Positions 7,085 through 53,015 of a DNA stretch of 64,000 bases are shown one piece after another. Under the pieces are notes generated by a model. The model was not told the DNA's origin. It made no database searches and saw nothing but the letters and a program-made list of their open reading frames with translations. Both the position numbers and the translations under genes were made by a program. This stretch comes from Octopus bimaculoides. Taxonomy: Eukaryota. Numbering within the stretch: position 1 is the stretch's first letter; each line of letters starts with the position of its first letter. The DNA lies in the NCBI RefSeq assembly GCF_001194135.2, contig NC_068983.1:145532452-145596451 (forward strand), in the 5' to 3' direction.

Positions 7085-9369
7085 NNNNNNNNNNNNNNNN
7101 NNNNNNNNNNNNNNNNNNNNNNNNNNNNNNNNNNNNNNNNNNNNNNNNNNNNNNNNNNNNNNNNNNNNNNNNNNNNNNNNNNNNNNNNNNNNNNNNNNNN
7201 NNNNNNNNNNNNNNNNNNNNNNNNNNNNNNNNNNNNNNNNNNNNNNNNNNNNNNNNNNNNNNNNNNNNNNNNNNNNNNNNNNNNNNNNNNNNNNNNNNNN
7301 NNNNNNNNNNNNNNNNNNNNNNNNNNNNNNNNNNNNNNNNNNNNNNNNNNNNNNNNNNNNNNNNNNNNNNNNNNNNNNNNNNNNNNNNNNNNNNNNNNNN
7401 NNNNNNNNNNNNNNNNNNNNNNNNNNNNNNNNNNNNNNNNNNNNNNNNNNNNNNNNNNNNNNNNNNNNNNNNNNNNNNNNNNNNNNNNNNNNNNNNNNNN
7501 NNNNNNNNNNNNNNNNNNNNNNNNNNNNNNNNNNNNNNNNNNNNNNNNNNNNNNNNNNNNNNNNNNNNNNNNNNNNNNNNNNNNNNNNNNNNNNNNNNNN
7601 NNNNNNNNNNNNNNNNNNNNNNNNNNNNNNNNNNNNNNNNNNNNNNNNNNNNNNNNNNNNNNNNNNGTGTGTGTGTGTGTGTGTGTGATTATTATAATTA
7701 TTTTTCTGAATTTATATTTAGTTTAGTCAGGTGGACGGTGTGTGTAGTGTCTTCAGTCTGCGTAAACCCTTCCAGAATTAAATTTTATACTGGGACCAGA
7801 TTGAGTAATGTTATATCATCTTTCTAAAGTATTGCTCTTCCATGAGGTTTTGGGACTACACTTCTTTATTTAAGACGATAGGGTGTTATTTGAGGGAAAT
7901 TTAGCTGCTATATCTAGAAGTAAGAGAGATCAGGCAGAGGATATCCTGCTATTTCGTCGGCGTATGAGGACAAGCTGATGTATGATGAATGCAGTGATGC
8001 CCATACGCACACGACCACACATGCATCCACACACACACACACACGCACGCGCGCACACTTTCCTAAAACGTAATGGATATCAATTACATTATACATATAC
8101 TCATACACACACACACACACACAAGCAAACACACACAAACACATGCACACAGATACACATACAGCCATACATCTTAACAAATAACCCATTCTTATCTTAC
8201 ATACAAGATAAAATGGTCAGCTGAAGTCCAATCCTTTGTTGACCTCATTCCTACTCTGACGTCATTCTAATTAAACCTGAGCAGATGGCCAACAATAAAG
8301 CGTGGCCTTTCTCTTGACCTTAATTCACCTGAAGAGATCTCAGCTGTAAGATTGAAAGCTTTTCTTGTCATCTTGTCATCGTCACATTCACTCACACACG
8401 CACACATACATACATACACACACATACACACACAGAGTTCAATCACATATATTCTCTTTATTATAGGCACACGATCTAAAGTTTTGTGAAGAGGAGTCTA
8501 GTCGATTAAATCGACTCCAGTGCTCTGGTACTTAATTTTTTCGATCCCAAAAGGATGAACTGCAAAGTAGACCTCGACTGAATTTGAACTCAAAACGTAA
8601 ACGGCCGGAAGAAATGCTGCTAGGTATTTTGTCCGACGCGCTAAAGATTCTGCCTGCTTGCCGCCCTAACCCAACACACACACATATACATAGACAGCGC
8701 TGCCAAAATTTGAGACATTATCATTTTTATTATTAGCATTAGTATAACGGCGGTAAACCGGCAGAATCGTTAGCACACCGGGCAAAATGCTTAGCGATAT
8801 TTCTTACGTTCTGGGTTCAAATTCCGACTTTAATATTTAAATAGCTTAAGACGGCGAGCTGGCAGAATCGTTAGAACGTTGGGCAAAATGCTTAGCAGTA
8901 TTACGTCCGTCTTTACGTTCTGAGTTCAAATTCTGCCGAGGTCCCCTCCCACAAAATTTCAGGCCTTGTTCCTTTAGTAGAGAGAATTATTATATTAGCA
9001 CGAAGGTGGCGAGCTGGCAGAATCGTTAGCACGCCTGGCAAAATGCTAAGTGACATTTCCTCCGACTTTACGTTGTGAGTTCAAGCTCCACCGAGGTCGA
9101 ATTTGTCTTTCATCATTTCGGGATTAATAAAAAATAATTACTAGTCGAACACTGGTTTTGATGTAATCGATTAGCCTCTCCCACAAAATTTCTGGCTTTG
9201 TACCAAAATTTAAAACCATTATTACTAATATATCTGAATAGGTGTGACATAAGTAACAATTTTTGACTGAATGTAATTTACACTTGAAAATTTTTTTGAG
9301 TTTTTCTTTTTTTTAAATCTTACCTTCTTTATTATTTTTTTTATGAATATATAAATAAATCAGTAACCA

Positions 9370-9930: not shown

Positions 9931-11247
9931 TATAAAGATGTCCTCAGCGACTCAGCTATTTCGTTTCTATGCCTTCAGTATTAGTCAGAAGATATCACCA
10001 TTTCAACTGAGACCATATTGAAAGCTGATACAGAAAAATGAACACCTGTAGTAACTGGGTGATTAGGGAATTGAATGACAAGAAACGGCAAATCATTCAA
10101 TAGAAAGATGAGAGCTACACAGCAACAGTAACATGAACAAGGCTTTGATTGTACCCTAATATTTGTTGTTACCGCTGTAGTTGTTGTTGTTGTTGTTGTT
10201 GCTTTGGTCTACTGGTCTCTTTGTTACTTGAACTACTGACAGATTTACTGTAAATAATGATTGCTACTATTGACTCAAGCTCACACATTTTAGGAGAGGA
10301 GTGGAGCCGATTTAATCCACACCAGTATTACTTTACACATATGTGTGTGTGTATGTATATGTGTGTGTGTGTGTATGCACATATAACTACATATAGGCAT
10401 GTATGCGTGTATGTGCATATATATTTATGTATTGTAGTAGTAGTAGTAGTTGAAAAAGATTTGGCTGCAATTTCTTGCAGATCTAGCAACCAAGTACAAG
10501 TTTCCTTGCTATCTTATTGTGTGTGTGTACATACATATACATGTGTGTGTTGTGTGTGCGTGTGTACATACATATACATGTGTGTGTGCGCGCGCGCATA
10601 TATAAGAGGGGTTGAATAGTTTACTATTTTCATAGTTGAGATCACTTTTTGGGGTTTTTTTTTTTTTTGATAGGGGGTCAGATTCACAACTGATTGCGTG
10701 TATGGAGTAAATATGACAGGCTTCTGCATAGTTTCCGTCTCACAAATTCCACACACAAAGGAATTCGTCAGCATGGAGTTAAGCTACAAGAAACATACCT
10801 AAAGTGCTCTGCAGTGGAATCGAACCAAGAGCGATATATTTGCAAAATGAACTTCTTAACAATGCGGCTATTCTAACAGCCAAAGTATTTTATTTTATCA
10901 GCGCCAAAATAATTCTTTCTAATTTTGATGCAAGTGGAGGCACATGGCCTAGTATTTAGAGCAGTAGACTCACGGTCGAGCGATCGCGGGTTCGAATCTC
11001 TGACCGGCGATGTGNNNNNNNNNNNNNNNNNNNNNNNNNNNNNNNNNNNNNNNNNNNNNNNNNNNNNNNNNNNNNNNNNNNNNNNNNNNNNNNNNNNNNN
11101 NNNNNNNNNNNNNNGGCCACAGTCAAAAGACTGAAACAAGTAAAAGAGTAAAAGAGATATATGTACGCTATATAGTATAGTATGTGAAACCAATGCCGGA
11201 TATCACTTTAATTCCTTTGTATTAATTTGTGGTCTCCAATTTCTTAC

Positions 11248-12476: not shown

Positions 12477-13413
12477 ACCCGGGACTACATTATATATCTA
12501 AAACACCAATGTGTGTGTGTGTTTGATTCTCTTTGGACCAGGTCGAACGACTACGTAAGAACTGATGTGATATCGAACGCTTTTGGAATATAACCCCAAA
12601 TTATCAGTAATACAGAATGTATCAATTTGACTACACTACTTCGGAATCTCTTAAGGTTTCGTTAGGGTTAAACCAATGACCATGCAAGCCAGAAGAAAGA
12701 ATTTATCCACCATGTCATTTCTCGCCGTGAGGTAAAGTAATATCTAATGTTTGGACATAGTCGTACTTCGTTTGTTTTCGAATTGCCATGCCTAACATCT
12801 CAAGACTAGGCCTCACAGTTAATCATCTTTACACACGAACTAGTTTACAAATGTTGAAATAATATTTTGCTGTGAATTAAAACATTGTGGACAGACTGTT
12901 TTATACTTACCTTAAGAGACTACGAAATTTAGAATTTAATTGTTTTTATTTGCATGTATATATTTTGAGCATATATACTAGATTGTGATTCTTATGATGT
13001 TCATACACACACACACATACATACACATAAATACATACATATGTAGGATAGATAGATAGATAGATAGATATGGAGTGAGAGAGAAAGAGAGAATATAGAT
13101 TTTCGTGAATATTAATATTCTTCGAGTCAGAGTAAGGCAAATTTTTTGTAGAGAACGGTATGATCGATTGCACCTACCCGAGGGTACAAATGATGCACAT
13201 TTACATCTGATAACTTTCTCGATTCCAGATTAAATGAAAAACCGAAGTAAAACTCAATAGAATTGGTAGTGAGACTGGTCGGTATCGAAGTAGTTGTAGT
13301 AAAACATTCAGTCCGGAGTATTCTGGTATCTCGACCAACTCCACCATAGTTGGATTTCTGGTAATAATGCAATACTTATGCATCAGTGATATAAAACCCA
13401 CACTCAACTCGTA

Positions 13414-14590
13414 TTACTCGACTTCTGGTTTCTGTCTATGATAAGCATCAAGCATTACTTTCTTTGGATGTCTGACAAAAAATAGTTTCTCTTTGGTAGA
13501 TGTCAACATGTTATCATTTGCATTGTCCTTGGGTTCTAGCGATGTACTCTCTAATTTGGGATCGCTGTTTCGCATTTTTCTTTGCGGTTTATCTCCAACA
13601 ATAAGCGAATGGACCAAACAATGACTGCTATTCGTGTTGAATTTCTGCTGCAAGAATCTACACAAAGGAGCTTTATCTGCTGGCCGATATGCATCTCTGC
13701 ACGTACACACCAATTTCGCCGTCTCTCTCAGGAGACCAATATCTTTTTTCAACAGCTCTCGCATCAAGATATTCTTTTTAATTGGTTTAGCTTTTATCAA
13801 GGATCCGTGAACTGGATAGATTGATTTCCAATCGACATTGATAAAGCCCTGGTTCACTTTTGAAGAATAATTTTCTCCTACATCACTAGACACTTCTCGA
13901 ATATTCTCTTTGTTGTTAAATCTTGATCGGGAATTATTAGTAATGTTAAGTATTCCTTTACTATTTCGTTGTAGTTCCTTTTTGTATTTCAAAGATGTTC
14001 CATTTTTCATAATCCTTGTTCTTTTCTTTTGTTTGCTCATTTTTTTACTGTTTTGAATAGGAACTTTACATTTTCTTTCTGAATGACCATACGTTTGCAG
14101 AACACGTCGAGTTGAAGTTTTTCCACTTGAAGATGTCGGTACAGTCGGCTTTTCTGCTGTTTTTCGTTTAGCTAAAAAATTAACAGAATCATTGTTCTCT
14201 TTGGAGTGTAGCTTTTCTTGACGAGATCTTGTATTTAATGTTAAACCCGATTTCTTACCTGATGTTGGATTTGATGAATATATTTGAGGGTTAGGATTTT
14301 TCTCTTTAGGTAAATAATGAGGTGGCTGTTTTTTATGGTTAAAATTCAGCTTTTCCGGGCGAGTACTGGCATTTTTTTTATCAGTAGCTACAATACAGGT
14401 TTTTATTCGGCTTATTGGCACCGTCTGACTAGTTTTGTCGTTTGTTTTGTTTCCACTGACGTTAACATCATTCAGTTGGTTTCTGGTGGGTTTGTTTGAA
14501 CGACCAGAAGTAATTGTTTTCTTCGTGAGATGCAACCAGTTCTTAAAAGGTGTGCCACCTGCTTCTGTTCCATTGTTAACATTGGTAGTC
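13414..14590 (-). CDS. Terminal coding exon (E) of the predicted tandem SKI/DACH-like domain gene; Lys/Ser/Asn-rich linker plus a C-terminal globular segment
   Basis: Stop-free frame from 14610 to TAA 13416-13414; acceptor TTCAATTTCTTGACAG at 14592-14591; AATAAA at 12950-12945 downstream. Linkage to the upstream exons is inferred from phase. Confidence 0.75.
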
Positions 14591-14704
14591 CTGTCAAGAA
14601 ATTGAATATTTTAAATTTTCTATTACGACTCTTTGATAACAAAGCGAAGCGACAAACAATAGGCGGAGGCAGTTGGTCTCCAGCCCTAAACATTCTCTAT
14701 ATCA

Positions 14705-14757
<53 letters not shown>

Positions 14758-15369
14758 TATGTATGTACGTATTCATGCATGTACGTATGTATGTCATTAT
14801 TCAGCTTTATTTCAAGATTTTTTTGCCAGTAGAGAAAGGGCCTGTTTCTAACCTAGATCCAAGGCCCCTTCATTCGAATTTCAGCAATATGAACAGAGTA
14901 TTTTTGTATGTATGCATGCATGTATATGTGCAGATTCGTATGTTTTGTTTTATGTATGTATTCTCTTGCATATAGTTACATATCTATACATTCTCATATA
15001 TACATAAACGATAGAGTTCTGGAAGGTTTTACAAATTTTTACATTTCCAGTGATAGATTGAATCTGTAATCTTTGAATCAGCTATCTCTTTTCTGGTTTT
15101 GAGAAGCCTAATTTCTCAAGATTGGCATTTAGGCAGTGTGTTACACATCCCCTATGTATGTATGTATGTATGTATGTTACTTTTCCCAACAAAGTCACCA
15201 CGAATCACTAATTTTACAACTAGCTATTTTGATTGTTGCAAATCAGTAATCGATGGTCGCTTTATTTACAATATGCTGTTAGCGATAGCCGACTCTGGCT
15301 ATCGCTCTGGCATGCAGGTGCTTGCGACTGAGGATGAGCCGAATAGCTCGAAACGGTTCAATATGATTA

Positions 15370-15416
<47 letters not shown>

Positions 15417-15625
15417 GTTCCATCTCGGCAACCCAATGCTACATGGGTAATCTCAGAATTATGGAAACCCTCATAAACTTATTGAGACTAGCCACTAATA
15501 ACAGGAAGAAACTACACGAAGAACACTGGTTGCTATAGCAACAACAGTCTGCACATGACACCTTCCTCCTTCCTTCCCTACCCTCCGCACACCACCACCA
15601 CATACACATACATCTAAGCAACAAC

Positions 15626-15654
15626 CTTTTCCAACTACCGCTTTTCCGAATGTC
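15626..15654 (-). CDS. Micro-exon D (DIRKSGSWKR) of the same gene; donor position uncertain
   Basis: Strong acceptor TTCTATATTTGTCTTCAG at 15656-15655. A 29-nt exon (AAG|GTTGTT) or a 47-nt exon gives the phase 2 needed by exon E. Confidence 0.45.
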
Positions 15655-16114
15655 CTGAAGACAAATATAGAAATACAAGGTAAAACTGCAACTTTTTGTT
15701 TTCTTTTCCTTTTGCCAACATTGAAACTTTTAAAGTTTTACCATTGATAATCAAAAAATATTGTTGAAACTAGTTTGGTATATACATAAATAAATTTATT
15801 TTAAACAATTACAAGTTTTCCAAATTTAGGTGCATTTTCAACAACAAATTTGCTTATATATATATATAATTCTTTTCTCTTATTTTTCAGTCATTGTAGT
15901 CCAGTCAAGCCGGAGCGTCACCGTGAAGGGTTTAATCGAACAGATCGATCTCAGTACTTATTTTTTAGTGTCTGGTATTTATTCTGTCTGTGTCATGCCG
16001 AATCGTAAAGTTACTGGGACGTAAACAAACCAACACCACACACTGCTAAAGATATTCAAGGTTCAGGTGGTGGTGGTAAACTGGGATATGGATTAAGTCA
16101 CGCAACCATCAAAA

Positions 16115-16760
16115 TAGGATCTTTCCAATTTGGCTGCCAATTTTCGAAAATTCAAAGTTTGTAGAAAATTTTAAAATTTGGTACATTAATGTAGTTTTCC
16201 AAGCTGAATCTCAGGAGATATTTCACTTTTTCCAGAAAATTTTTTAAAAAGTTACTGAGGTTTAAAGTTTGATAATTTTCACTCGGTCAAAAAATTGGAT
16301 TTGGTATTTTGTGCTCGACAGCACGTGTTGTCAACTGTAAACAAATCAAATTTTGCTTTATGCACGCCATATAACCCCCTCATAACTTTTTTTATTTTTT
16401 GGAATTTTCAGAAAAGTTTTGTCAATTTATATTCTATACACGAGAATTCGTGCGATTATCCAAAAATAAAACAAAAAATTTTTGGTGCGTGATTTAAGAC
16501 TTATTTGGCTGTTATTTTTAGTACATCTGACGACCACCTCAATGAGTGGAATATATTATTCGACACGTGCTTTCTTGCAGACAAAAGAATTCTCATGCTT
16601 GACTTGTTACTATGGAAAAAGGCATGGATATGTCTTTGGCTTACGATTGGCTAAAATTACCCAAAATTTGCAAACTTTAAAAGCTAATGACTTTATTTAT
16701 TGCTTTATTGCGAAAATGAATTTCAAAGCAGTGATTAACATACAAAACCATATCATTATG
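16115..16760 (+). mobile_element. ~650 bp non-autonomous repeat, copy 1 of 3
   Basis: Aligns by eye with 16975-17610 and 45160-45790 (GCTGAATCTCAGGA, GTTGTCAACTG, AAAATTACCCAAAATTT). Confidence 0.75.
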
Positions 16761-16974
16761 CAGAATATAAAATCAATTCGAGCAGGAATTGAAGACATTG
16801 AAAATTGGCAGCCAAACAGAACAGATCCCCAAAATCTTCCAGCAATACCCATCCAAATCCATCTCAAATCATGTCCTATGTCTTGTAAAAGGATCCACTG
16901 ATAATGTGGTTTTGAGTACACTCTGTTTAAGAAAATATGATAAAATCATGGCTAGAACGCCTTTAAATATAGGT

Positions 16975-17610
16975 CGGATCTTTTATTCAAAGTTTAGTGA
17001 AAATTTTAAAATTTGGTGTACTGATGTAATTTTCCACGCTGAATCTCAGGAAATAATTCACTTTTTCAAAAAAAAAATGTTTAAAAAAGTTACAGAGGTT
17101 TGATAATTTTCACCCAGTCAGAAAACAGGATTTTGAAGCTCTCATTTTGTGCGTGACAGCACGTGTTGTCAACTGTAATAAAATGAAATATTGGCGGAAT
17201 TCTGCTTTACGCACGCCACATAACCCCTCATAATTTTTTCATTTTTTGGGAATTTTCAAAAATTTTTGCGAATTCTCCACACGGGAATTCTTACGATTAT
17301 TTTTGCAAATTCTACAAACGGGAATTCGTACGATTATGCAAAAACCAAAACAAAAATTTCTTGTGCGTGATTTAAGGTCTATTTAGCTATTATTTTTAGC
17401 ACATTTCACGACCCCTCCCCCATTTAATAAGTTAAAAATGACCACGCGAATAAACAGTTTGTAACAGCTTGGCTTGTTAATATGGAAACAGGCACCTATA
17501 TGTCTATGGCTTTCGATTGGGTAAAATTACCCAAAATTTATTAACTCTTTATTTATTGATTTATGGAGAAAATGAATTTCAGGTCAAAGATTAGCATACA
17601 AAACTACATT
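16975..17610 (+). mobile_element. ~650 bp non-autonomous repeat, copy 2 (direct, near-tandem)
   Basis: Same blocks as 16115-16760, with a small internal duplication of GGGAATTC(T/G)TACGATTAT. Confidence 0.75.
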
Positions 17611-17847
17611 GTCAGACACCAGTAACGTATAATAGTTAGAGGGCATATGACTCTAATTTACAAAGTCAGGTTTATATCCTACATGAGAAATCTATTTTAA
17701 ACTTCATCATCAACCCAAGGACACTATTGTCTTCAAGACCTAGTATTCCAAGGGCTGGTTACCCAGTTTCCATGGCGTATAGATCACCGAGATAACAACA
17801 GTCCCTCTGAACGGACCGCCAGTGCGTCGTAGATATAAGATATTAGA

Positions 17848-18040
17848 AAGGCGGTGAGCTGGCAGAATCGTTAGCACACCGGGGAAAATGCTTAGCAACG
17901 TTTATTCTGTCGTTACGTCCTGAGTTCAAATTCTGCCAGAGTCGACTTTGCCTTTCATCCTTTCGGGGTCGATAAAATAAGTACCAGTTGAACACTGGTG
18001 TCGATGTAATCGACTTACACCCTCCCCCATTGTTGCTGGC
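17848..18040 (+). mobile_element. SINE family A copy
   Basis: GGCGGTGAGCTGGCAGAATCGTTAGCAC...GAGTTCAAATTC...GTCGACTTTGCCTTTCATCC. Confidence 0.85.
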
Positions 18041-18719
18041 ATTCCGACAAAATTGAAACCGATATGAGATAAAAGAACTTACTTCAGAAAAATAAGCGCT
18101 CGTTGTTTGCTCTTTTGATATTCCCATAGCAATAATTGATAATTTAAAACTTTTCCAGAGGAGTTGTTTTCTGTAGTTCGACTTAGTTCCTGTCTTTTCT
18201 GGCTATTATTGTTGTTATTAGCATTATTTTTTGATAAATGAATTTTCAATATTCTGGTCACAGGACTCTATAAAATATGAACGAATATTGACTCACTACA
18301 TTAGTAAAGGTACGCAAATTTGTAATAACAGTAACAACAATAACAACTACTATTACCACAACAACAGCATCAACAGCATCATCATTTACAACAACGACGA
18401 CGACGACAAGAATAACAACAACAACAAGAGTGCAAACCTCCGCCAAGGCAACACCAATGTCCTCTCAACGATTAGCGGAAGATGATTTTTAAAATGAGAA
18501 TGTCTGAAGTAAACTCGACTGCTCTCACAAACGAGAATACTGAAAAAAAGAACACGACCGCTCTCAAAAATTAAGTTTAAAAAAACGGAGAAATAACCCA
18601 GAATCCTTGTCCGGTACCTGATCGATCCCAATGGTAGTCATGGAATGTGAAGGTGGGTGTGCGAGCCGTGTTTGTAATGCTGTGTGTATGTCGTCTGCAG
18701 TGGGAACAGGGACAGTTTT

Positions 18720-18885
18720 CTCTATGAAGGCCTTTTCTAGTCTATCCGCTGATAGTATCTTTACGACCATTAAGGTCTATAGTGAAAATTCTATCCGTGC
18801 GCGAAAGAAAACGAAAAGGACCTGCATACGGTGCTGATAACGGAGGTTCAACAATATCATTGCGTACAAAAACGCGAGTCCAAGA
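18720..18885 (-). pseudogene. Ty3/Gypsy integrase C-terminal (GPY/F-type) fragment
   Basis: Translates to SWTRVFVRNDIVEPPLSAPYAGPFRFLSRTDRIFTIDLNGRKDTIS/(frameshift)DRLEKAFIE, matching the Gypsy VFVR.D...PPL..PY.GPF...TVSIDRLKPA pattern. Confidence 0.8.
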
Positions 18886-19279
18886 AGTAAAGCTTCCTTC
18901 AAGGCAGAGCTAGAAATGCAATTGTCAAGTAAGTGAGAGGTTTTAAACAGGAGCGGTATATTCTAAATTGGTAAAACTAAAAAATTGTCGAGGATAAATT
19001 AAATTTATTATTGTTACTGAATATGTTAGTGTTAATTAATTTCTGAACGGTTTTGCTACCGTTTGTTTATGTAGTTTGATTTTGTTATCCATCAGTTTCT
19101 ACTAAGAAAGAGACGCGAGTAAAATTAATAATAGAGAAACGAAAATAAAACTTTAGCAACAGCAACGCCGCCATAACTTACGTGGAAACCATGAGCGTGC
19201 TTTCAAGGGAGATAATCAGAGAAAGACTTGAAAGTCAATGTAAGATCGTAATACTTTATATAAAGTAAAGTAAATATAA

Positions 19280-19480
19280 CAAATAATCTAGAATCCTTGT
19301 CTCGTACCGGATCGATCCCCAAATCTAATCAGTTCGTGCCAGTCACGAGGCCAAACATCCCAAAAGTTTCATACGAATCTATCCAGTGGTTCTTGAGATA
19401 TCCTTTCCACGGACAAACAAACAAACACGACTGAAAACAATATCTCCGCCTTCCCTAAGGCAGAGGTAATAATGACTGCT
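19280..19480 (-). mobile_element. DINE-1/HINE-like non-autonomous element
   Basis: Reverse complement begins ATTACCTCTGCC...GTGTTTGTTTGTTTGTCC...GATAGATTCGTATGAAACTTT. A partial copy lies at about 18595-18630; similar architecture at 59345-59600. Confidence 0.45.
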
Positions 19481-20128
19481 TTTAGAATATGCCACCCAAA
19501 TCTGGCAATGAAGGACTATATTTACCACGAATACAAAGTGGTAGGAGCCATATACAGCTAGAACATTATTACAAAATATCAATTATAGAACTACAAATAT
19601 ATCTAGTGCAGTATTATGGAAAATTAATACAAATAACTACGAAAATCGAACAAAAATGCTTTCTGCTTCAAGTGAACCAACAAATACAAAACAGAGGTTA
19701 CAATAACAGAGATCTGGGAAGAAAACGGAGAAACAATAACAGAAATCGTAAAATGGTTAATCCACATTACTCCGTGAGGAGATTAGGGCCAGTTTATCGG
19801 TTTTTCCGGTGTATATATTCCTCCCTGGACGGGACGCTGGTCCGTCGCATGATTTCTCATTTTCCCCTGCTGAGTGGACTGGGGCAACGTGAAATGAAGT
19901 GTTTTGCTCAAGAGTGCATCGCCCGGTCCGGGATCGAAATCACAATCTTACGGTCATGTGTCCAACACCCAAACTACTAAACCATACGCCCCCAAGAAAT
20001 CGTGATATGTTATGATAAAATGATGGCAACAAAAACCCTTATGGCGTAATATATAAAGTAATTCTAGATATTGTTTGGCTAAGAAAAAAATTCACCTTTG
20101 ATCATAGATTTGCTCAGACAGAGCTTAC

Positions 20129-20155
20129 TTGGAGTAAATATTTCAATTGTGCACT
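20129..20155 (-). CDS. 27-nt micro-exon C (SAQLKYLLQ) of the same gene
   Basis: Acceptor TTTTTTTTTTACTATACTACTGATACCTTTCAG and donor GTAAGC; phase 0/0 joins exon B to exon D in an open frame. Confidence 0.6.
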
Positions 20156-20524
20156 CTGAAAGGTATCAGTAGTATAGTAAAAAAAAAACTACTGACCCCT
20201 TGGCTAACAATGACGTCCCGGGTTCAATCCAGCAGTCTCGGGATAACAAAAGCCTTGTAAAGGAACTCGGATAGACGGAAACTTTAGCGAAGCCCATCCG
20301 ATGAATTTTACTTGCAATTCAACGGTCTAGCCTTGACAGACACACTATATCATGCTGAGTCTACCTGTGAATTTCATTAAGAGTATACGTTTCTCTATGG
20401 AATACTCAACCACTGAATTCGCTAAATTCAATGGGTTGGTTGAATCGAAATCGACGTGAGAGTCTTATCATATCGCAGGCCCATATTGAACGGACAGTTC
20501 TGGAACTTTGATTCCCACAATCCG

Positions 20525-20907
20525 TTGCTGGCACTCCGTCGCTTACGACGACGAGGGTTCCAGTTGATCCGATCAACGGAACAGCCTGCTCGTGAAATTA
20601 ACGTGCAAGTGGCTGAGCACTCCACAGACACGTGTACCCTTAACGTAGTTCTCGGGGATATTCAGCGTGACACAGTGTGACAAGGCTGACCCTTTGAATT
20701 ACAGGCACAACAGAAACAGGAAGTAAGTGTGAGAGAAAGTTGTGGTGAAAGAGTACAGCAGGGTTCGCCACCATCCCCTGCCGGAGCCTCGTGGAGCTTT
20801 GGGTGTTTTCGCTCAATAAACACTCACAACGCCCGGTCTGGGAATCGATACCACGATCCTATGACCGCGAGTCCGCTGCCCTAACCACTGGGCCATTGCG
20901 CCTCCAC
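20525..20907 (-). mobile_element. Full-length tRNA-derived SINE family B
   Basis: A/B boxes as in the 12108-12476 copy; TSD CCAC(A/C)ATCCGT. Confidence 0.9.
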
Positions 20908-21546
20908 CCACCATCCGTACAGCATGAAGAAACGCCTCATCCTCGACCTATCACATCGAGCGACCTAGACACATACCAACATGAAATAGAATTAGCGATA
21001 CTTTTTAGAGAAACTATTACTCTGCAAGCGTAGCATCGGAGAGAGAGGGTGGACAAGGAAACGGAGAGGGGAGGGAGGTAAGAGAGGCGAGGGAGATGAT
21101 AGAGGAAGGAGGAAGAAGAGAGAGAAGAGATACAAAGGCAGAGAGAGAAAAAGAGAGAAAAGGAGAGAGAAAGAGAGAGAGAAATAGAGGGGGAAGAAAA
21201 CCGAAGAGGGAAAAGATAGAGAGACGGAGAGAAATAGAGAGGAAGGGAGGGGGAAAAGAGTGGAAGAGAAAGAGTATCAACGCTGGGAATATTCATGTGT
21301 CAATACGATATCACCATCACCATCATCATCATCATCATTATCATTTAAGGTCCATGTTCTATGCTGGCATGGTTGGACGGATTGACAGGAGCCGATGAGT
21401 TGAAGGACAACATCGTACTCCAAGGTCTACTTTCACATGGTTTCTACGGCTCGATGCTCTTCCTTATGCGATATAATATTGTTATATTATATCGCGTTAG
21501 GAATATAAAGAGCTGTATGTGCGTGTGTGTATGAAAATTGAATCAC

Positions 21547-21668
21547 CTTGTGAGAATAGAACTTTTCCTCCCATGGAATAGTTGCCGTTGAAGGTGGGGA
21601 CATGTGGTAAAGAGCTCTCATGAAGAATGTCCAGTTCAGTAACATGGTCTGTGACGTTATATAGGAAC
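21547..21668 (-). CDS. Exon B (122 nt; SYITSQTMLLNWTFFMRALYHMSPPSTATIPWEEKFYSHK)
   Basis: Acceptor GCTTTTACTTTTGACAG, donor AAG|GTGATT; phase 1 start matches the phase 1 end of exon A. Confidence 0.7.
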
Positions 21669-21947
21669 CTGTCAAAAGTAAAAGCATATTGTAAGCAACA
21701 CTATTTATGATGCGGTGGCGGCGGCGGTCCTAATGTAATTTCTTACATTGGTATACTATAGGTTTATACTGGATTAAGTCGGACTGAAAAAAAAAGAATG
21801 AAGACGACGCTGGTAGGATTTGATCTCAGAACGTAAAACTGCAAAGCGTTTCTTCTGGTGCTCACTAGATTTTGATAGCAATAAGAATAATATTTCTTTC
21901 CTTCTTGGCAGAAACGTTAGCACGCCGGGCGAACTGCTTCGCGGTAT

Positions 21948-23648
21948 AACGGCTCTGTGAATTATTGTGAATACTGTTGTGTTACTTTGTGAAAACTGTC
22001 TCGGTGAATAATTGTGATTTTTGTAGAAGTATTATGGTTGTATTTCACGTGAGCTGCTGCATTTTTCCCAGCTATGACAAGTGGTAGTGTCTCCAGTATG
22101 GAGAGCTACGCCAAAGCCACTGCGGTGAGGAAGCCAGTGCCGCTAGAAACCAAGTTAATCAAGTTGAATATGGAGGTTACCAGAAGCAGGAATTTGATAG
22201 AAGTTGAGGGAGACTCATACAAATTGTGCCCCCCAAAAGAGACTAAAGAAAATAAAATTCTGAGGACNNNNNNNNNNNNNNNNNNNNNNNNNNNNNNNNN
22301 NNNNNNNNNNNNNNNNNNNNNNNNNNNNNNNNNNNNNNNNNNNNNNNNNNNNNNNNNNNNNNNNNNNNNNNNNNNNNNNNNNNNNNNNNNNNNNNNNNNN
22401 NNNNNNNNNNNNNNNNNNNNNNNNNNNNNNNNNNNNNNNNNNNNNNNNNNNNNNNNNNNNNNNNNNNNNNNNNNNNNNNNNNNNNNNNNNNNNNNNNNNN
22501 NNNNNNNNNNNNNNNNNNNNNNNNNNNNNNNNNNNNNNNNNNNNNNNNNNNNNNNNNNNNNNNNNNNNNNNNNNNNNNNNNNNNNNNNNNNNNNNNNNNN
22601 NNNNNNNNNNNNNNNNNNNNATTAAACCAGAGTGGTTGGTTGCAACAGTGCTGGCTGCAACCAAGGAGGAGCCGGAATTGGGACCAGTGGCGAAAACAAA
22701 AGTGTGCGAATGGTGGGGATTTGGACTCGAAATGTGGCTTTTTGCCACATTCGAGGACATAGAAAGAATTCCCTACCAGATAGAAGTGGAGGACGAGAAA
22801 ACGTTAAATGTTGTAATCGAGGGAAGACAACCAAATTGTTATATATGCGGGGAGAGAGGTCATATGAAGACCAAATGCCCTCTATATGAGTTCACACAGC
22901 CACAGCAAGAGAAAGCACAAACAGAGGAGGAAAGAATTGTAGACCACACTGAGGAAATAAAAGAGACAGAAGTGTGAGACAGAAAACAAAGGAAAAGAAC
23001 GAAAACGGAGCTACTAACCCTAAAAAGCGAAGGAAAAATAAGTCAAAGGAACGGTCAACAGAAAACAAAAAAGAGATAAAAAAGCCAGAAACTAATAATG
23101 TACAAGAAGAGGAGGAGAGAACGGATAAAGATGTGAAATACAAGGGGGTTTTGATAAAGTACGAGAATTTCGAGCAGATGGAGAGAAGGGTCGAGAGGTT
23201 GGGAGAAATAATAAGAGTGAAGATGCTAGAGAAATGTGCTGAAAAATGCATTTTGATACGTGAGGAAAGATGCTGGGAGTGCATAAAAGAACATGGTGAA
23301 AATATAATAACGAAACAGATATGGTTGGTGGAGACACCACCCCCTAGAACTGATTATTTGCAGTTGTTAAGGACGGACGTAACAATGATTAATGGAAGAA
23401 ATATAATGCGTGTGTTTGAATTTTTTGAGTTACAAAACCGTTAAAATGTTTACATGACGTTGAACGTAAAAGTGAAAAACTGGATAAATGTAACCACCCG
23501 ACTTCGGGGATCGAGTGGACATTGCGCCTCATTTTTTTCATACTTGCATATTATCATTTTATTTTAATTACCCCGATTTTATGTTTGCGTTTTGTACTGT
23601 CTTTATGTTTTGTGATGTCTTAAAAATTCTTTGTATAGCCCTTTATGA
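21948..23648 (+). mobile_element. Gag/ORF1-like (CCHC knuckle) element without RT, probably Tx1/L1-derived, inserted into a SINE A copy
   Basis: ORF from ATG 22074 across the gap to VIEGRQPNCYICGERGHMKTKCP, then a frameshifted continuation to 23444. SINE A halves at 21907-21947 and 23653-23815; GTAT duplicated (21944-21947, 23649-23652). Confidence 0.75.
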
Positions 23649-24074
23649 GTATTTCGCCCGACGCTACGTTCTGAGTTGAAATTCCGCCGAGGTCGACTTT
23701 GCCTTTCATCCTTTCGGGGTCAATAAATTAAGTACCAGTTGCGCACTGGGGTCCATTTAATCGACTGGCCCCCTCCCCCAAAATTTCGGGCTTTGTGCCA
23801 AGTGTAGAAAAGAATATTTCTTTCCTTCTAATTTTGCCAGAAAGCCAACAATTTTGAGGAAAGGGAGCAGGTCGGTTATATCGAAGCCAATATTTGATTA
23901 GTACTTTATCTCATCGAATTGGAAAGTATGAAAAGCAAGTTCGACCTTGGCGGAATTTGAACTCAAAACGTAAAGACGGACGAAATACCGTCTATGATCA
24001 TAAGTCTCTTCAAACAAGATTAGCCTAGCACTAAAAAAAAAATTATTTCACCATAGGTCATTTTAGAGGGTAGT

Positions 24075-24290
24075 ATTCTTTTCTACTCTAGGCACAAGGT
24101 TCGAAATTTTGAGGGAGGGGGCCAGTCGATTAGATCGATCTCAGTACGCAACTGGTACTTAATTTATCGGCCCCGAAAGGATGAAAGGCGAAGTTGACCT
24201 CGGCGGAATTTGAACTCAAAACGTAAAGACAAACGAAAAATCGTTATGCATTTTACCCGGCGTGCTAACGTTTCTGCCAGCACGCCACCT
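24075..24290 (-). mobile_element. SINE family A copy
   Basis: Matches the family consensus on the minus strand, including the tail CTCCCTCAAAATTTCGAACCTTGTGCC. Confidence 0.85.
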
Positions 24291-24424
24291 TTATGAAATT
24301 ACATATGACATTATCTCAAAGTTTTAACAAACATATAGATATCTATCTATAAACATCCCAAACTTCTGAATCACAGAGAGGGCAAATCATAGTTATATAT
24401 ATATATATATATATATATACTTAC

Positions 24425-25562
24425 ATAAAAAACCTGTTTGTGTCAAAATATCTGGCATCTGGGCTGTTAACTTCCGCGGACACAAAATAACTGGCTGATC
24501 CCAGTTTGTTTCTTGATTACTCCAGCTGTTTAAGGTAGTTATATGAAATTGCCATCTCAAAATATCTTTTACTGTCAGTGACATAGCAGGAAACACGCTT
24601 AAGAGGGCGTGTATTGGCACATAAGCTTGTCTCTGTCCTCTGTGGTCAGTTCTGATAAATCCTGGCAGGTTATACATTAAACCGTCAGCACCGGAGAACG
24701 GTAAAAGGCGAAGTGAATATAATTCAGAAGTAGAGCCCTGAAAATGGGTGCTGTTGATAGTGTTATTTGTATTGGATATGGAATGGTAAAGTGAAAACAA
24801 AGTGCACGAAGAAGAAGATGGGTCTTTCGTGGCCCAATGTTTTTTAACAACCATTTCAACCAAGCACGACCAATAGAATATAACTTGTTTTAAATTGACA
24901 ATAGTATCCATTTTAGGAAGCATTTGAAATTTGCTGAGAAATCTTGATTGCTGTTTGGAAGAACACGTATAGATATTCTGTGTTATTAAAGGATACTTCA
25001 GCTTTAGACGAAGGCAGTTTAACACAATGGTGCAGTTTTTTCCAGTACAACCAGGAAATAGAACATCTCTAATATCAGACCAACTAGCCATAGGATTTCC
25101 TTGCACAGAAATATGAGGGACTGACCATATGATCTGATCGGGCAATTTTGCTATAGATTCATAAGACGGTAAGAAACTAGAGTTCAATACATTATCTATG
25201 TTTGATACTAACTGAGAAGCTCTGCAATTTAAACTGGATGCATCTTTGCTTATGACATGTTTCCAACGAACCAACTTGTTTAAATTCTGCCGATTCTTCC
25301 AAACATCTTCCAAGTTAACTATAATAATTCCAGTATCAACAATCTGGAAATTTTCCAGGAATTTGGCTCGCTCGCTGCTGGAACATTTGTGAATATTTCT
25401 TCGTTGCAGAGGATATTTCAAAGTGAATTTTAAACTATTTAGAACGATAGTGCAGTTTGATTCAGAACAATCTGGAAACAGGGTGATTTTTACATCTTGC
25501 CAATTAGCCATTTGAATATTACCCACATTTATATGTGGTATGCTTCTTATAAGATCTTCCAT
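24425..25562 (-). CDS. Exon A (379 codons): uncharacterised protein with two 83-aa internal repeats and a third diverged repeat, SKI/SNO/DACH-like winged helix by eye
   Basis: ATG at 25562 preceded by in-frame stops and an acceptor TTATTCCTACCAG (25576-25575); donor GTAAGT at 24424. Repeats aa 5-87 vs 145-227 are 41/83 identical without gaps. Confidence 0.85.
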
Positions 25563-25924
25563 TCAGAAGATTTACTGGTAGGAATAATTAACACAAAAAC
25601 CTATGTTTCTTCTAAAAACTGCAAAATAAAACAGAAAAACACATCATGAAACATGCTTCTTTAGACTACACATATACATTTTCAATTATTTTTTTTTTTT
25701 TTAATAATCTTTTCTGAATATTATTTACTAGAAGTCAAAAAATTTTTTTTTTAACATAATGAACGGAAGCGAGGGAAATCCCATAACACTAACAAAATGC
25801 TCCAAAATTGATGAAATCGATGTTCAGTGATAAGAAGAAAAAATGGAAAGACTTCCTCCCTGTCCCCACCTCCATTTTCTCACAAATTATTGTGTTTTTT
25901 TTTTTTTTTTTTTTTTGCCAAAAT

Positions 25925-26465
25925 CCCACGTTTTCGGATACGGAGTTTCCGGAAAATTGCCAAAAATCGGAATTTTGAAATTTTTTGCCTCTCCCCATGT
26001 CTTCATTTTTCACTTTTTTCCGCAAACCTAATCCTAAAACCCCAACCCTAACCCTAACCTTAAGCCTAAAACCGTAAGCCTAAAACCCTAACAGTAACCT
26101 TAAAACCCTAAAGCCCTAACCCTAAAGCCCTAACCCTAACCCTAAAACCTAACCCTAACTCTAAAACCCTAACCCTAACCCTATTTTTTCAGAATCGTAA
26201 TCTCCGTATTCTTCCGCATATTTTGACAAAAAAAATTGTGAAAAAAAGATTTTACAAAAATGTTTGTAAATTTTATTCAGAATCCATAATCTCCGTATTT
26301 TTCCGCATTTTTTTTTTTTTTTTTTTTTTTTNNNNNNNNNNNNNNTTTTTAATTTTCTGAAGAAAGTTTAAAAAAGAAGAATTTAGTGGTGGGGTAATTT
26401 CAAAATGCCGATTTTTGCCAGTTTTTTTTTGCAGATTCGCATTCTCCGTACCCGAAAACGGGGGA
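25925..26465. mobile_element. Inverted-repeat (foldback/MITE-like) element carrying a degenerate TAACCC array
   Basis: Imperfect ~55-60 bp inverted repeats (GTTTTCGGATACGGAG...AAAAATCGGAATTTTGAAA / TTTCAAAATGCCGATTTTT...CTCCGTACCCGAAAAC) flank CCCTAA variants at 26027-26183. Confidence 0.6.
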
Positions 26466-26933
26466 GGGGGGTAGAAAAAAAATTAAATAAAAAACGGTGT
26501 GTTTGGTGGGGTACAAAAGAAGTCTTGCAAAAAAAGAAAGAACATTAAAGAAAATGATAAATGAAGATGATTCAATTTATGGAGAAATTGCTTCTTTGTG
26601 TGTGTGTGTGTGTGTGTGTGATAATTAGCATATATATATATGTATTATGTACTTTATTGTGTTTTGTTATGCCCAAGATTCCTCCGTTCGATGAAAAATT
26701 GTCTTTCATGAAACGTGTCCGTGGTACGAAAAAGTTGAGGCTCTCATGTTGCGGGGATCACTAACCAAACGCCAGTAAATCAACTACTCGAAAAGTAGCC
26801 TCCCTTATCAATGACTAGTAAACATTTTGGCAGAGTATTTTCCCTTCATGATTAATTGTCGCTAACGTGAACTAATTTCCTAATAAGAACAGACCTTAAT
26901 TCAGTCCCAGCAGAGACTTCACAGCACACTTAC

Positions 26934-26960
26934 GATTGGATCTCTACTCGTGAAGCGCAT
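26934..26960 (-). other. Candidate 27-nt 5'-UTR exon of the minus-strand gene
   Basis: Acceptor GCATGTTTGTGATCTTTCAG, donor GTAAGT. Confidence 0.45.
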
Positions 26961-27442
26961 CTGAAAGATCACAAACATGCACCAAGTAAATCATTTAAGT
27001 AAATCAGTAATGAAGCATTGACTGATTCTACAGAATACATTAGTTTCGAAATTTTGGCACAAAGCCAGCAATTTCGGGAGAGAGGTGGATAAGTCAATTA
27101 TATCGACACCAGTGTATAACTGGTACTTACTTTGTCTTCCTCGGCAGGATTTGAACTCAGACGAAATGCCGCTAAGTGTTCTGCTCTGTGTGCTAGCGAT
27201 TCTGATTGCTCGCTGCCATTACAGTAGAATTACATTAAGTGCTCACAATATTCTACTACACGCATAAATTAAACGCGAGCGCGCGTGGTCTGGGGTGTGC
27301 GTGGGGGGGGATGGGACTTCGTCCCTGCACGAATAAAGCAAGTGATGCATGTCAATGATATAAAGCTAATACAAATAATAAATCGAATTTTCATATAAAT
27401 CTTTCATATTAGAAGAGACAACTAGAAACAGGGTATATATAT

Positions 27443-27533
27443 ATATATTTAATTATATATAAAGGGCATTAACTGTGTATTAATGCCTCACGCTAATACA
27501 CAGTTAATGCCCTTTATATATAATTAAATATAT
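27443..27533. repeat. Perfect 40-bp inverted repeat with an 11-nt loop
   Basis: ATATATTTAATTATATATAAAGGGCATTAACTGTGTATTA / loop ATGCCTCACGC / exact reverse complement. Confidence 0.95.
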
Positions 27534-27645
27534 CTATGAAGAAACGATGAATTTTTTCATTACGAAATTTTTCGTTATTTTTTCATTATGAGGTTTTTTT
27601 CACGCTGACTACTTGATAAATTCTTATAAAGAATTTATCCTATAT

Positions 27646-27678
<33 letters not shown>

Positions 27679-28561
27679 GTNNNNNNNNNNNNNNNNNNNN
27701 NNNNNNNNNNNNNNNNNNNNNNNNNNNNNNNNNNNNNNNNNNNNNNNNNNNNNNNNNNNNNNNNNNNNNNNNNNNNNNNNNNNNNNNNNNNNNNNNNNNN
27801 NNNNNNNNNNNNNNNNNNNNNNNNNNNNNNNNNNNNNNNNNNNNNNNNNNNNNNNNNNNNNNNNNNNNNNNNNNNNNNNNNNNNNNNNNNNNNNNNNNNN
27901 NNNNNNNNNNNNNNNNNNNNNNNNNNNNNNNNNNNNNNNNNNNNNNNNNNNNNNNNNNNNNNNNNNNNNNNNNNNNNNNNNNNNNNNNNNNNNNNNNNNN
28001 NNNNNNNNNNNNNNNNNNNNNNNNNNNNNNNNNNNNNNNNNNNNNNNNNNNNNNNNNNNNNNNNNNNNNNNNNNNNNNNNNNNNNNNNNNNNNNNNNNNN
28101 NNNNNNNNNNNNNNNNNNNNNNNNNNNNNNNNNNNNNNNNNNNNNNNNNNNNNNNNNNNNNNNNNNNNNNNNNNNNNNNNNNNNNNNNNNNNNNNNNNNN
28201 NNNNNNNNNNNNNNNNNNNNNNNNNNNNNNNNNNNNNNNNNNNNNNNNNNNNNNNNNNNNNNNNNNNNNNNNNNNNNNNNNNNNNNNNNNNNNNNNNNNN
28301 NNNNNNNNNNNNNNNNNNNNNNNNNNNNNNNNNNNNNNNNNNNNNNNNNNNNNNNNNNNNNNNNNNNNNNNNNNNNNNNNNNNNNNNNNNNNNNNNNNNN
28401 NNNNNNNNNNNNNNNNNNNNNNNNNNNNNNNNNNNNNNNNNNNNNNNNNNNNNNNNNNNNNNNNNNNNNNNNNNNNNNNNNNNNNNNNNNNNNNNNNNNN
28501 NNNNNNNNNNNNNNNNNNNNNNNNNNNNNNNNNNNNNNNNNNNNNNNNNNNNNNNNNNNNN

Positions 28562-52965: not shown

Positions 52966-53015
<50 letters not shown>

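What the first reader, a model, noticed from the sequence alone, without database searches (positions are those of the whole stretch)
13414..25562. Uncharacterised ~830-aa protein with tandem SKI/DACH-like winged-helix repeats
Seen: five phase-compatible exons (1138+122+27+29+1177 nt = 831 codons). Exon A holds a gapless 83-aa duplication (41/83 identical, 140-aa offset). A third diverged unit (LPGFIRT...YVPIHALLSVFP...CPRKLTAQMPDILTQTGFL|CSYITSQTMLLNW) is completed across the A/B junction. Established: the SKI/SNO/DAC domain has the pattern [26 protein letters not shown]...I.[12 protein letters not shown]...GLIT..D, and the known SKI, SnoN, SKOR, DACH and SKIDA1 proteins carry one copy. Inference: the repeats align to that pattern by eye (IPHINVGNIQMANWQDVKITLFPDCS; IHKCSSSERAKFL; IVNLEDV). 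A possible fourth unit lies near the C-terminus (GFINVDWKSIYPVHGSL...RELLKKDI), after a long basic linker. This would be a multi-winged-helix nuclear protein architecture I do not recognise, possibly cephalopod-specific.
Basis: partly seen in the sequence, partly recalled or inferred. Interest (0 to 1): 0.8.

Follow-up and report, generated by a model that had tools for sequence, protein, structure and literature searches.

The report
Octopus protein with duplicated DACH-like domains
This is a real, expressed, single-copy octopus gene for an 873-residue basic protein; its two tandem N-terminal domains belong to an unnamed mollusc and annelid domain family that probably folds like the SKI/Dachshund winged helix but is not a sequence member of that family.

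Summary
The gene is real, on the minus strand. RNA contigs from three octopus species join four coding exons with GT-AG borders into an 873-codon ORF. Its 27-nt and 29-nt micro-exons are wrong; one 185-nt exon takes their place. The assembly gap lies inside an intron and does not touch the coding sequence.

The gene is single-copy and under strong purifying selection (pN/pS 0.04 in exon A). The 140-residue tandem duplication is confirmed (z = 44).

The repeated domain (D) is not cephalopod-specific. One copy starts long uncharacterised proteins of bivalves, gastropods and an annelid, and a diverged copy ends them. It has no Pfam match and keeps an invariant Cys-Cys-His-Cys set.

A confident AlphaFold model (pLDDT 90.8) has the beta-beta-alpha-alpha-beta-alpha-beta-alpha order of the Dachshund homology domain. 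Its only coherent PDB match is Dachshund 1L8R (TM 0.50, rmsd 3.9 A), but with a non-significant E-value.

The "third unit" lies where the family's second module lies. The "fourth unit" is a different module, shared with gastropods.

Verdict: a new domain family, probably DHD-like, in a new architecture.

The parts
24425..25618 (-). First coding exon ('exon A'). Acceptor AG at 25620-25619, ATG at 25562-25560, donor GT at 24424-24423. It encodes residues 1-379 plus one base.
   Evidence: RNA contig of X4 covers 24423-25618 with 0 mismatches. Splice sites and an upstream in-frame stop are shown.
25158..25562 (-). Domain D, copy 1 (residues 1-135). Family-invariant residues: W21, C32, C37, C60, H102, C113.
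   Evidence: Family alignment A1. AlphaFold model pLDDT 90.8. HMM hit iE 1.3e-46 in the six-frame scan.
24735..25148 (-). Domain D, copy 2 (residues 139-276). The same invariant residues sit at +140: W161, C172, C177, C200, H242, C253.
24426..24677 (-). Third unit, first part (residues 296-379: MYNLPGFIRTD...QAYVPIHALLSVFP...CPRKLTAQMPDILTQTGFL). It lies where the family's second module M2 lies.
   Evidence: M2 HMM score 8.8, against a maximum of 7.2 for 2000 shuffles; not significant. The region is shared with P0003.
21547..21668 (-). Exon B (122 nt, residues 380-420: CSYITSQTMLLNWTFF...). It completes the third unit.
   Evidence: Organism E RNA contig matches exactly 21547-21668, with loose ends that match the end of exon A and the start of the 185-nt exon. 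Organism B shows the A-to-B junction.
22268..22620 (.). Assembly gap. It lies inside the intron between exon A and exon B and has no effect on the coding sequence.
   Evidence: The RNA contig length between exon A and exon E (307 nt) equals 122 + 185 nt of window sequence.
18083..18267 (-). Third coding exon (185 nt, residues 421-482: SPVTRILKIHL...VLNYQLLLWEYQKSKQRALIFLK).
   Evidence: Joint 14589/18082 with GT..AG ends in X4 and X25. GT-AG borders. The peptide is conserved in Argonauta P0002.
13047..14590 (-). Last exon ('exon E'). Coding 14590..13417, stop at 13416-13414, then at least 367 nt of 3'UTR. The contig ends in a TCTA microsatellite.
   Evidence: X4 contig covers 13047-14590 with 0 mismatches. 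Sequence checked.
13891..14589 (-). Basic, Ser/Thr/Asn-rich linker (residues 483-715; pI 10.8; 22% Lys+Arg). It contains the NLS-like cluster KKMSKQKKRTR at 14014-14046.
   Evidence: Composition. pN/pS 0.28, less constrained than the domains.
13606..13866 (-). C-terminal module M4 (residues 724-810: IYPVHGSLIKAKPIKKNIL...CTCRDA...FLQQKF...HCLVHS).
   Evidence: phmmer iE 3e-15 to Haliotis P0016 residues 1910-2000, and 2e-14 to Gigantopelta P0012 residues 2586-2710. Unrelated to D. pN/pS 0.05.

Best explanation
The locus encodes a single-copy, tissue-restricted, strongly constrained 873-residue nuclear-type basic protein. It is the octopod member of a previously unnamed lophotrochozoan protein family.

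The family's usual plan is:
- an N-terminal domain D of about 115 residues;
- a second module M2 about 100-150 residues later;
- a long disordered region, with module M4 in gastropods;
- a diverged copy of D (D') at the C-terminus.

In octopods D has been duplicated in tandem, before the Octopus/Argonauta split. The protein is short, and no D' is encoded in the window.

D most likely folds as a Dachshund-homology-domain-like winged helix: two N-terminal strands, a helix-turn-helix, and a wing with an inserted helix. It is extended by C-terminal helices. The four invariant residues Cys32, Cys37, His102 and Cys113 probably tie those helices to the core through a zinc ion.

Inferred mechanism: the two D modules, perhaps with the degenerate third unit, act as adjacent docking surfaces for DNA/chromatin or for partner proteins, as DHD-like domains do in DACH1, SKI/SnoN, INI1 and DNTTIP1. 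The basic linker and M4 would provide nuclear targeting and further contacts.

Shown: gene structure, expression, constraint, duplication, family membership, predicted fold.
Inferred: zinc binding, nuclear location, DNA or partner binding.
For: GENE MODEL AND EXPRESSION
-. Only one indexed RNA run of the species holds exon A, and three other deep RNA runs show zero depth on it.

SINGLE COPY
- Contig depth in run X5 (kind not recorded) is 13.8 and 12.6 over the exons and 10 in a flank, against 1e4-1e6 in repeats. There is no second copy in the window.

CONSTRAINT
- Against organism B there are 13 synonymous and 2 non-synonymous changes in exon A (pN/pS 0.04). The C-terminal region (residues 700-873, which contains M4) gives 0.05 and the linker 0.28.

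FAMILY
- 27 hits among 1.84 billion representatives. They include an Argonauta orthologue (70% identity, 860 residues, two D copies) and long proteins of Pecten, Mizuhopecten, Argopecten, Mytilus, Dreissena, Saccostrea, Haliotis, Gigantopelta, Lottia and Owenia.
- D against D': hhalign probability 97.2%, E 3.6e-11, with C, C, H, C aligned.
- M2 is found in most long members. M4 is shared with gastropods.

FOLD
- AlphaFold with 26 sequences gives pLDDT 90.8 and pTM 0.81, with the order b-b-a-a-b-a-b-a-a.
- Best coherent PDB match is Dachshund 1L8R, TMt 0.50, rmsd 3.9 A.
- Merged D profile against DHD: score 19.1, against a column-shuffle null of 11.1 +/- 2.3 (1 of 150 shuffles reach it). M2 against DHD: 18.6 against 10.0 +/- 1.8 (0 of 150).
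- DHD-like winged helices with an extra helix in the wing occur in several chromatin proteins that lack sequence similarity to each other (PMC4509781).

BASIC LINKER
- NLS-like cluster and composition.
Against: - No statistically significant structural or profile match to any DHD. Foldseek E 1.6 and probability 0.30; hhalign probability 4% or less; no PF02437 hit.
- SKI 1SBX and SnoN 3EQ5 do not appear among the 50 listed Foldseek matches.
- In the viral structure library the top (also non-significant) matches are KilA-N, Bro-N and antirepressor domains. The fold class could therefore be named differently.
- No experimental or localisation data exist. No paper names any family member.
- The third unit of the octopod protein is not significantly similar to M2.
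Confidence: 0.55

Rival explanations
1. D is a KilA-N / Bro-N / APSES-type DNA-binding domain rather than a DHD. It may have been acquired long ago from a large DNA virus or a mobile element and then domesticated in lophotrochozoans.
For: The top Foldseek matches in the viral structure library are 'Repressor domain protein' (probability 0.84, E 0.027), a KilA-N DNA-binding protein (0.51), and several Bro-N and antirepressor proteins. The INI1 paper notes that DHD-like domains also resemble the Mbp1 (APSES) winged helix, so the two fold classes are close.
Against: - None of these matches is significant. Their TM-scores (0.2-0.45) and rmsd (5-16 A) are worse than for Dachshund 1L8R (0.50, 3.9 A).
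- No Pfam KilA-N or Bro-N hit and no recurrent PHROG hit in 26 members.
- The gene is single-copy, has introns, is under purifying selection, and every named member of the family comes from a mollusc or annelid genome.
Confidence: 0.2
2. D is a new zinc-stabilised protein-protein interaction module with no evolutionary link to winged helices. The DHD resemblance would be convergent topology or a limitation of the prediction.
For: - Invariant C-x4-C...H-x10-C in both D and D'.
- Every sequence and structure comparison with known families is non-significant.
- M4 also has a CxC...HCxxH pattern.
Against: - The predicted secondary-structure order matches a DHD element by element.
- Three separate profile comparisons fall in the same topological register, each with P about 0.01-0.07.
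- The one coherent PDB match is a DHD.
Confidence: 0.2
3. The ORF is a transposon-derived or decaying sequence, or the exons belong to separate genes.
For: The introns contain retroelement fragments: a zinc-knuckle ORF at 22636-22977 and high-copy repeats. The O. vulgaris database model is a different, shorter join.
Against: - One RNA contig spans all exons in the window's species and in a second species.
- Single-copy depth.
- pN/pS 0.04-0.05 in the domains.
- An 860-residue collinear orthologue in Argonauta.
Confidence: 0.02

Closest known systems
SKI/SNO/DAC Dachshund homology domain (Pfam PF02437; structures 1L8R DACH1, 1SBX SKI, 3EQ5 SnoN)
   Same: - Predicted element order beta-beta-alpha-alpha-beta-alpha-beta-alpha, and a core of about 90 residues.
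- 1L8R is the best coherent PDB match (TMt 0.50, rmsd 3.9 A).
- Weak profile similarity in the correct register (P about 0.01).
- Found in a basic, probably nuclear protein.
   Different: - No PF02437 match.
- The CLPQ motif seen in the SKI, SnoN and DACH1 alignment is absent.
- D has an invariant Cys-Cys-His-Cys set and about 40 extra C-terminal helical residues.
- Two to three copies per protein.
- No match to the Ski Smad4-binding (SAND-like) region in the PDB sequence searches, no Pfam domain beyond D, and no DACH-type second conserved domain.
DHD-like winged helices of INI1/SMARCB1, BAF45a/PHF10, DNTTIP1 and BCOR (PMC4509781)
   Same: These are precedents for DHD-like folds, with an extra helix in the wing, in chromatin-associated proteins that share no detectable sequence similarity with SKI/DACH. 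D would fall in that category.
   Different: They were not compared directly here and none appeared in the Foldseek list. They are described as metazoan chromatin proteins (PMC4509781), whereas every named D-family member found here is a mollusc or an annelid.
KilA-N / Bro-N / APSES DNA-binding domains
   Same: They are the top, non-significant, structural neighbours in the viral library. They are also small alpha/beta DNA-binding domains with an N-terminal hairpin.
   Different: Lower TM-scores, higher rmsd, and no sequence-profile signal.
Uncharacterised long lophotrochozoan proteins (e.g. Pecten maximus XP_033727550.1, Mizuhopecten XP_021341513.1, Haliotis XP_071093045.1, Gigantopelta XP_041360668.1, Owenia CAH1775492.1)
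   Same: True homologues. They share domain D (E 1e-9 to 1e-16 with a single query sequence), and the gastropod ones also share M4.
   Different: They are 1200-3150 residues long, have one N-terminal D, a clear M2 and a C-terminal D'. The octopod protein has two N-terminal D copies, a degenerate M2 and no D'.

Membership tests
SKI/SNO/DAC (PF02437) | Match to the Pfam PF02437 profile at or near its gathering score | tested here: not met
   No Pfam family at E <= 10 for exon A. PF02437 is never listed for 26 D, 9 D' or 14 M2 sequences. True DHDs all carry PF02437.
SKI/SNO/DAC (PF02437) | Profile-profile similarity to an alignment of SKI, SnoN and DACH DHDs | tested here: inconclusive
   hhalign P 0.066 (D), 0.068 (D'), 0.011 (merged D + D') and 0.0099 (M2). 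HH probability is 4% or less. Empirical column-shuffle nulls: 1 of 150 and 0 of 150 reach the observed scores. All alignments are in the expected register.
SKI/SNO/DAC (PF02437) | DHD fold: N-terminal hairpin, helix-turn-helix, and a wing with an inserted helix | tested here: inconclusive
   The AlphaFold secondary-structure order fits. 1L8R gives TMt 0.50, rmsd 3.9 A over 85 columns, but Foldseek E 1.6 and probability 0.30. 1SBX and 3EQ5 are not among the 50 listed matches.
SKI/SNO/DAC (PF02437) | Family motifs seen in the SKI, SnoN and DACH1 alignment A4 (CLPQ after strand 2; C-x3-Q at helix 3) | tested here: not met
   A4 has invariant C-L-P-Q. D has W-x-D-V/I-K-E at that position, with only the Cys and the E/Q of 'CS..EQ' comparable.
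KilA-N / Bro-N / APSES | Profile or structural match to KilA-N or Bro-N domains | tested here: inconclusive
   No Pfam or PHROG profile hit. Foldseek BFVD best E 0.027, probability 0.84, TM 0.2-0.45.
Unnamed lophotrochozoan D-M2-M4-D' family | N-terminal domain D with invariant W, C-x4-C, C, H, C | tested here: met
   Present twice. phmmer E 1e-9 to 1e-16 to mollusc and annelid proteins. Invariant columns, and positions in both repeats.
Unnamed lophotrochozoan D-M2-M4-D' family | Module M2 about 100-150 residues after D | tested here: inconclusive
   The octopod third unit is in the right place and ranks above 2000 shuffles (8.8 against 7.2), but the domain E-value is 6.8.
Unnamed lophotrochozoan D-M2-M4-D' family | C-terminal diverged copy D' | tested here: not met
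   The protein ends 63 residues after M4. The D' HMM finds only the two D copies in a six-frame scan of the window.
Transposon or retroelement protein | High genomic copy number and transposase, RT or gag domains | tested here: not met
   Single-copy contig depth, no other copy in the window, and no Pfam domains.

The most novel reading that the evidence does not exclude
Domain D, its C-terminal copy D' and module M2 together define a previously undescribed lophotrochozoan branch of the SKI/Dachshund winged-helix superfamily. Its D and D' domains are stabilised by a CCHC zinc site that the DHD sequences aligned here do not have. The proteins use two to three such modules, separated by long disordered regions, as a multivalent chromatin or DNA scaffold. 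Octopods remodelled it by tandem duplication of D and loss of D'.
Probability: 0.45. Interest if true: 0.6.

Novelty: new variant of a known kind. Interest (0 to 1): 0.5.

Why it matters
DHD-like winged helices sit in important developmental and chromatin regulators: DACH, SKI/SnoN, SMARCB1 and DNTTIP1. Here, a conserved and strongly constrained family was found in every named mollusc class sampled and in an annelid. It has no Pfam entry, no name and no paper.

If the fold assignment holds, it would add a zinc-stapled, multi-copy variant of that fold. It would also give mollusc and cephalopod biologists a candidate lineage-specific nuclear regulator.

The practical gains are smaller but immediate:
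- a corrected gene model of 873 residues;
- evidence that the public O. vulgaris model is probably mis-joined;
- alignments that could seed new domain families.

Tried and rejected
- AlphaFold on the 420-residue N-terminal part without an alignment gave pLDDT 31.6 and was unusable.
- phmmer and profile searches of PDB sequences with the N-terminal part, D and M2 gave nothing significant. The best was E 0.03-0.05, to unrelated proteins.
- Pfam on both large ORFs and on ten long homologues gave nothing.
- The word-indexed search with the D alignment returned only 12 short unlabelled proteins and no new taxa. A look-up of one of them gave an unlabelled ENA contig.
- hhalign of the octopod third unit (A3) and of the C-terminal region (A5) against D and D', and of A5 against A3, gave probabilities below 1%. 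I therefore rejected the idea that these are further copies of the repeat on sequence grounds.
- PHROGs gave no recurrent hit.
- Read laying behaved inconsistently. The zero depth on exon A for X4 is therefore an artefact.
- The 98-nt 5'UTR exon was not found within 25619-28200.
- A literature search for six family accessions found no paper.

Full report
**1. Gene structure and the assembly gap**

The finding lies on the minus strand. Two long ORFs stand out: 25562..24393 and 14535..13414.

A single 3147-nt RNA contig of run X4 (same species as the window, depth 62.7) maps as follows:
- 25618..24423 at contig positions 99-1294, no mismatch;
- 18269..18082 at positions 1413-1600, one mismatch;
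- 14590..13047 at positions 1600-3143, no mismatch.

The 307 nt between exon A and the last exon equal exon B (21668..21547, 122 nt) plus a 185-nt exon (18267..18083). The 2-nt overhangs at both joins fit exon B.

Exon B is seen directly in other species:
- a 3040-nt RNA contig of organism E matches exactly 21547-21668, and its loose ends read into exon A and into the 185-nt exon;
- a 453-nt contig of organism B joins exon A to exon B;
- the join from the 185-nt exon to the last exon is seen in the window's species (X4) and in organism B (X25).

All four coding exons have canonical AG/GT borders. The spliced ORF is open for 873 codons, with an in-frame stop in the 56 nt before the ATG.

Its 27-nt and 29-nt exons are wrong and are replaced by one 185-nt exon. 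The frame is the same because the difference is 129 nt. The Argonauta orthologue contains this exon's peptide.

The gap 22268-22620 lies in the intron between exon A and exon B and has no bearing on the coding sequence. A 98-nt 5'UTR exon beyond 25618 (further 5' in the transcript) was not located.

**2. A real, constrained, single-copy gene**

- Contigs of run X5 (kind not recorded) cover the exons at depth 13.8 and 12.6, with 10 in a flank. Repeats in the introns reach 1e4-1e6.
- tblastn of the protein against the window finds only the exons themselves.
- Against organism B, exon A has 13 synonymous and 2 non-synonymous differences (pN/pS 0.04). The C-terminal 170 residues give 0.05 and the basic linker 0.28.
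- Expression looks restricted. Only one indexed RNA run of the species holds exon A. Three deep 2026 RNA runs show zero depth on it in the 6% of reads sampled.

**3. The duplication**

Residues 2-130 and 142-272 align with a Smith-Waterman score of 263, against 30 +/- 5 for shuffles (z = 44). The offset is exactly 140 residues.

The proposed third and fourth units give z <= 1.5 against either repeat.

**4. Relatives**

The word-indexed search found only a 580-residue O. vulgaris hypothetical protein (97% identity). That model joins residue 189 directly to the last exon, which no RNA evidence here supports.

Exhaustive phmmer against 1.84 billion representatives found 27 proteins:
- an 860-residue Argonauta hians orthologue, 70% identical, collinear, also with two repeats;
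- a 352-residue unlabelled protein with one repeat plus the third unit;
- long (1183-3147 residue) uncharacterised proteins of Pecten, Mizuhopecten, Argopecten, Mytilus, Dreissena, Saccostrea, Haliotis, Gigantopelta, Lottia and the annelid Owenia, each with one copy near the N-terminus.

None of the five long proteins that were scanned has a Pfam domain; the only listing was an Apolipoprotein hit far below its gathering cut-off (16.7 bits against 90). No paper mentions the six family accessions searched.

The domain is therefore not cephalopod-specific. The tandem arrangement is so far seen only in octopods. A neighbour-joining tree pairs each Octopus repeat with its Argonauta counterpart, so the duplication predates their split.

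**5. Family anatomy**

- **Domain D.** An alignment of 26 D domains has invariant W21, C32, C37, C60, V82, L94, H102 and C113.
- **Domain D'.** The long proteins end in a domain homologous to D (hhalign probability 97.2%, E 3.6e-11). The C-x(3-4)-C, His and final Cys are aligned. Four ligand-type residues conserved in both copies across phyla point to a CCHC zinc site.
- **Module M2.** A second module (F/Y-V/I-P..L..FPQ...RCCS.EEGR..T.W...HVTS.DLLV.W) follows D by about 100-150 residues in most long members. The octopod third unit, which spans the exon A/B junction, sits at that place. It scores just above all 2000 shuffles (8.8 against 7.2) but is not significant. M2 against D gives hhalign P 0.005, in register.
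- **Module M4.** It has a CxC...HCxxH pattern and is unrelated to D, D' or M2.
- **No D' in the window.** No D' is encoded anywhere else in the window.

**6. Testing the SKI/DACH idea**

Sequence profiles:
- PF02437 never matches the octopus protein or any of 49 family domains.
- Real DHD sequences were recovered from the PDB and from the protein database (all carry PF02437).
- hhalign against DHD profiles gives P 0.066 (D), 0.068 (D'), 0.011 (merged D + D') and 0.0099 (M2). HH probabilities are 4% or less.
- With column-shuffled DHD alignments as an empirical null, 1 of 150 (D) and 0 of 150 (M2) shuffles reach the observed scores.

Structure:
- With the 26-sequence alignment AlphaFold gives pLDDT 90.8 and pTM 0.81. 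The elements are E10-13, E16-20, H21-28, H39-47, E57-59, H62-70, E80-83, H84-89 and H91-104, plus further helices.
- That is a hairpin, a helix-turn-helix, and a wing with an inserted helix. This is the feature that distinguishes DHD-like winged helices (PMC4509781).
- Foldseek against the PDB finds nothing significant (best E 0.96). The only match with coherent geometry is Dachshund 1L8R: TM 0.50 on the target, rmsd 3.9 A, 85 of 99 residues, probability 0.30. Apart from one S100 chain (TMt 0.49, rmsd 6.2 A), the other listed matches have TM <= 0.24, mostly with rmsd of 7 A or more.
- Against viral models the best, also non-significant, matches are KilA-N, Bro-N and antirepressor domains with lower TM. 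That fold class is known to be close to DHD-like domains.

**7. Conclusion**

D is probably a DHD-like winged helix. It is not a demonstrable member of the SKI/SNO/DAC family, and it differs from that family by a conserved CCHC set, a C-terminal helical extension and its multi-copy architecture.

The protein is best described as the octopod member of a new lophotrochozoan family. It is most likely a nuclear DNA/chromatin or partner-binding scaffold. That function is inferred from the fold class, the pI 10 linker with a KKMSKQKKRTR cluster and the roles of DHD-like domains elsewhere.

It is moderately interesting: an unnamed, conserved domain family with a plausible but unproven link to an important regulator fold.

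Noticed in passing
window 22636-23444 (+), next to the gap 22268-22620: The intron holds an ORF with a CCHC zinc knuckle (Pfam zf-CCHC, E 2.9e-05; CYICGERGHMKTKCP), followed by a Lys/Glu-rich ORF. It looks like a gag-like retroelement fragment. RNA reads map there at low depth with many mismatches, as expected for a multi-copy element.
   Followed up: partly
window 51787-53058 (-) and 4573-5349 (+): Reverse-transcriptase fragments of non-LTR retrotransposons. RVT_1 matches 52384-53058 at E 9e-16, and 51787-52368 only weakly (E 0.0035, 17.5 bits, below Pfam's 29.6-bit cut-off). The ORF at 4573-5349 looks like a piece of a retrotransposon ORF2, but has no Pfam hit.
   Followed up: partly
window 17849-18045, 21884-21941, 23565-23866, 24320-24470, 14697-14893, 12996-13143: Short interspersed or microsatellite repeats with contig depths of 1e3 to over 1e6 in the RNA run X4 and in runs X5 and X14 (kind not recorded). 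One lies 38 nt from the donor of the 185-nt exon. A (TA)n tract starts immediately after the exon A donor.
   Followed up: no
protein P0001 (O. vulgaris, 580 aa) against window 25562-13414: The only public annotated Octopus-genus protein found for this gene joins residue 189 (inside repeat 2) directly to the last exon. It omits half of repeat 2, the third unit and the 185-nt exon. No RNA evidence here supports that join, so it is probably a mis-annotation. No protein of the window's own species appeared in the database search.
   Followed up: partly
proteins P0008, P0013, P0015, P0023-P0025, P0028, P0039-P0044; locus L001 3001-3708: A subgroup of single-domain proteins of about 150-250 residues (NHVPYI..KKMAVWSDIKE...) comes from unlabelled ENA, JGI and Logan assemblies, some on contigs over 1 Mb. 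The host organism is unknown. They lack the Pro before the first Cys or replace 'FPxC' by 'WC'.
   Followed up: partly
window 685-694, 2440-2807, 7085-7666, 11015-11114, 26332-26345, 27681-28561, 48520-48853: There are seven further assembly gaps in the window, mostly flanked by microsatellites. The 881-nt gap at 27681-28561 lies 5' of the gene, at higher window coordinates than 25618, and could hide the missing 98-nt 5'UTR exon.
   Followed up: no
Read laying: The same 3147-nt X4 contig was laid in some calls and silently omitted in others, including a stretch that contained all of exon A. Zero depth from contig runs in this tool is not evidence of absence.
   Followed up: yes
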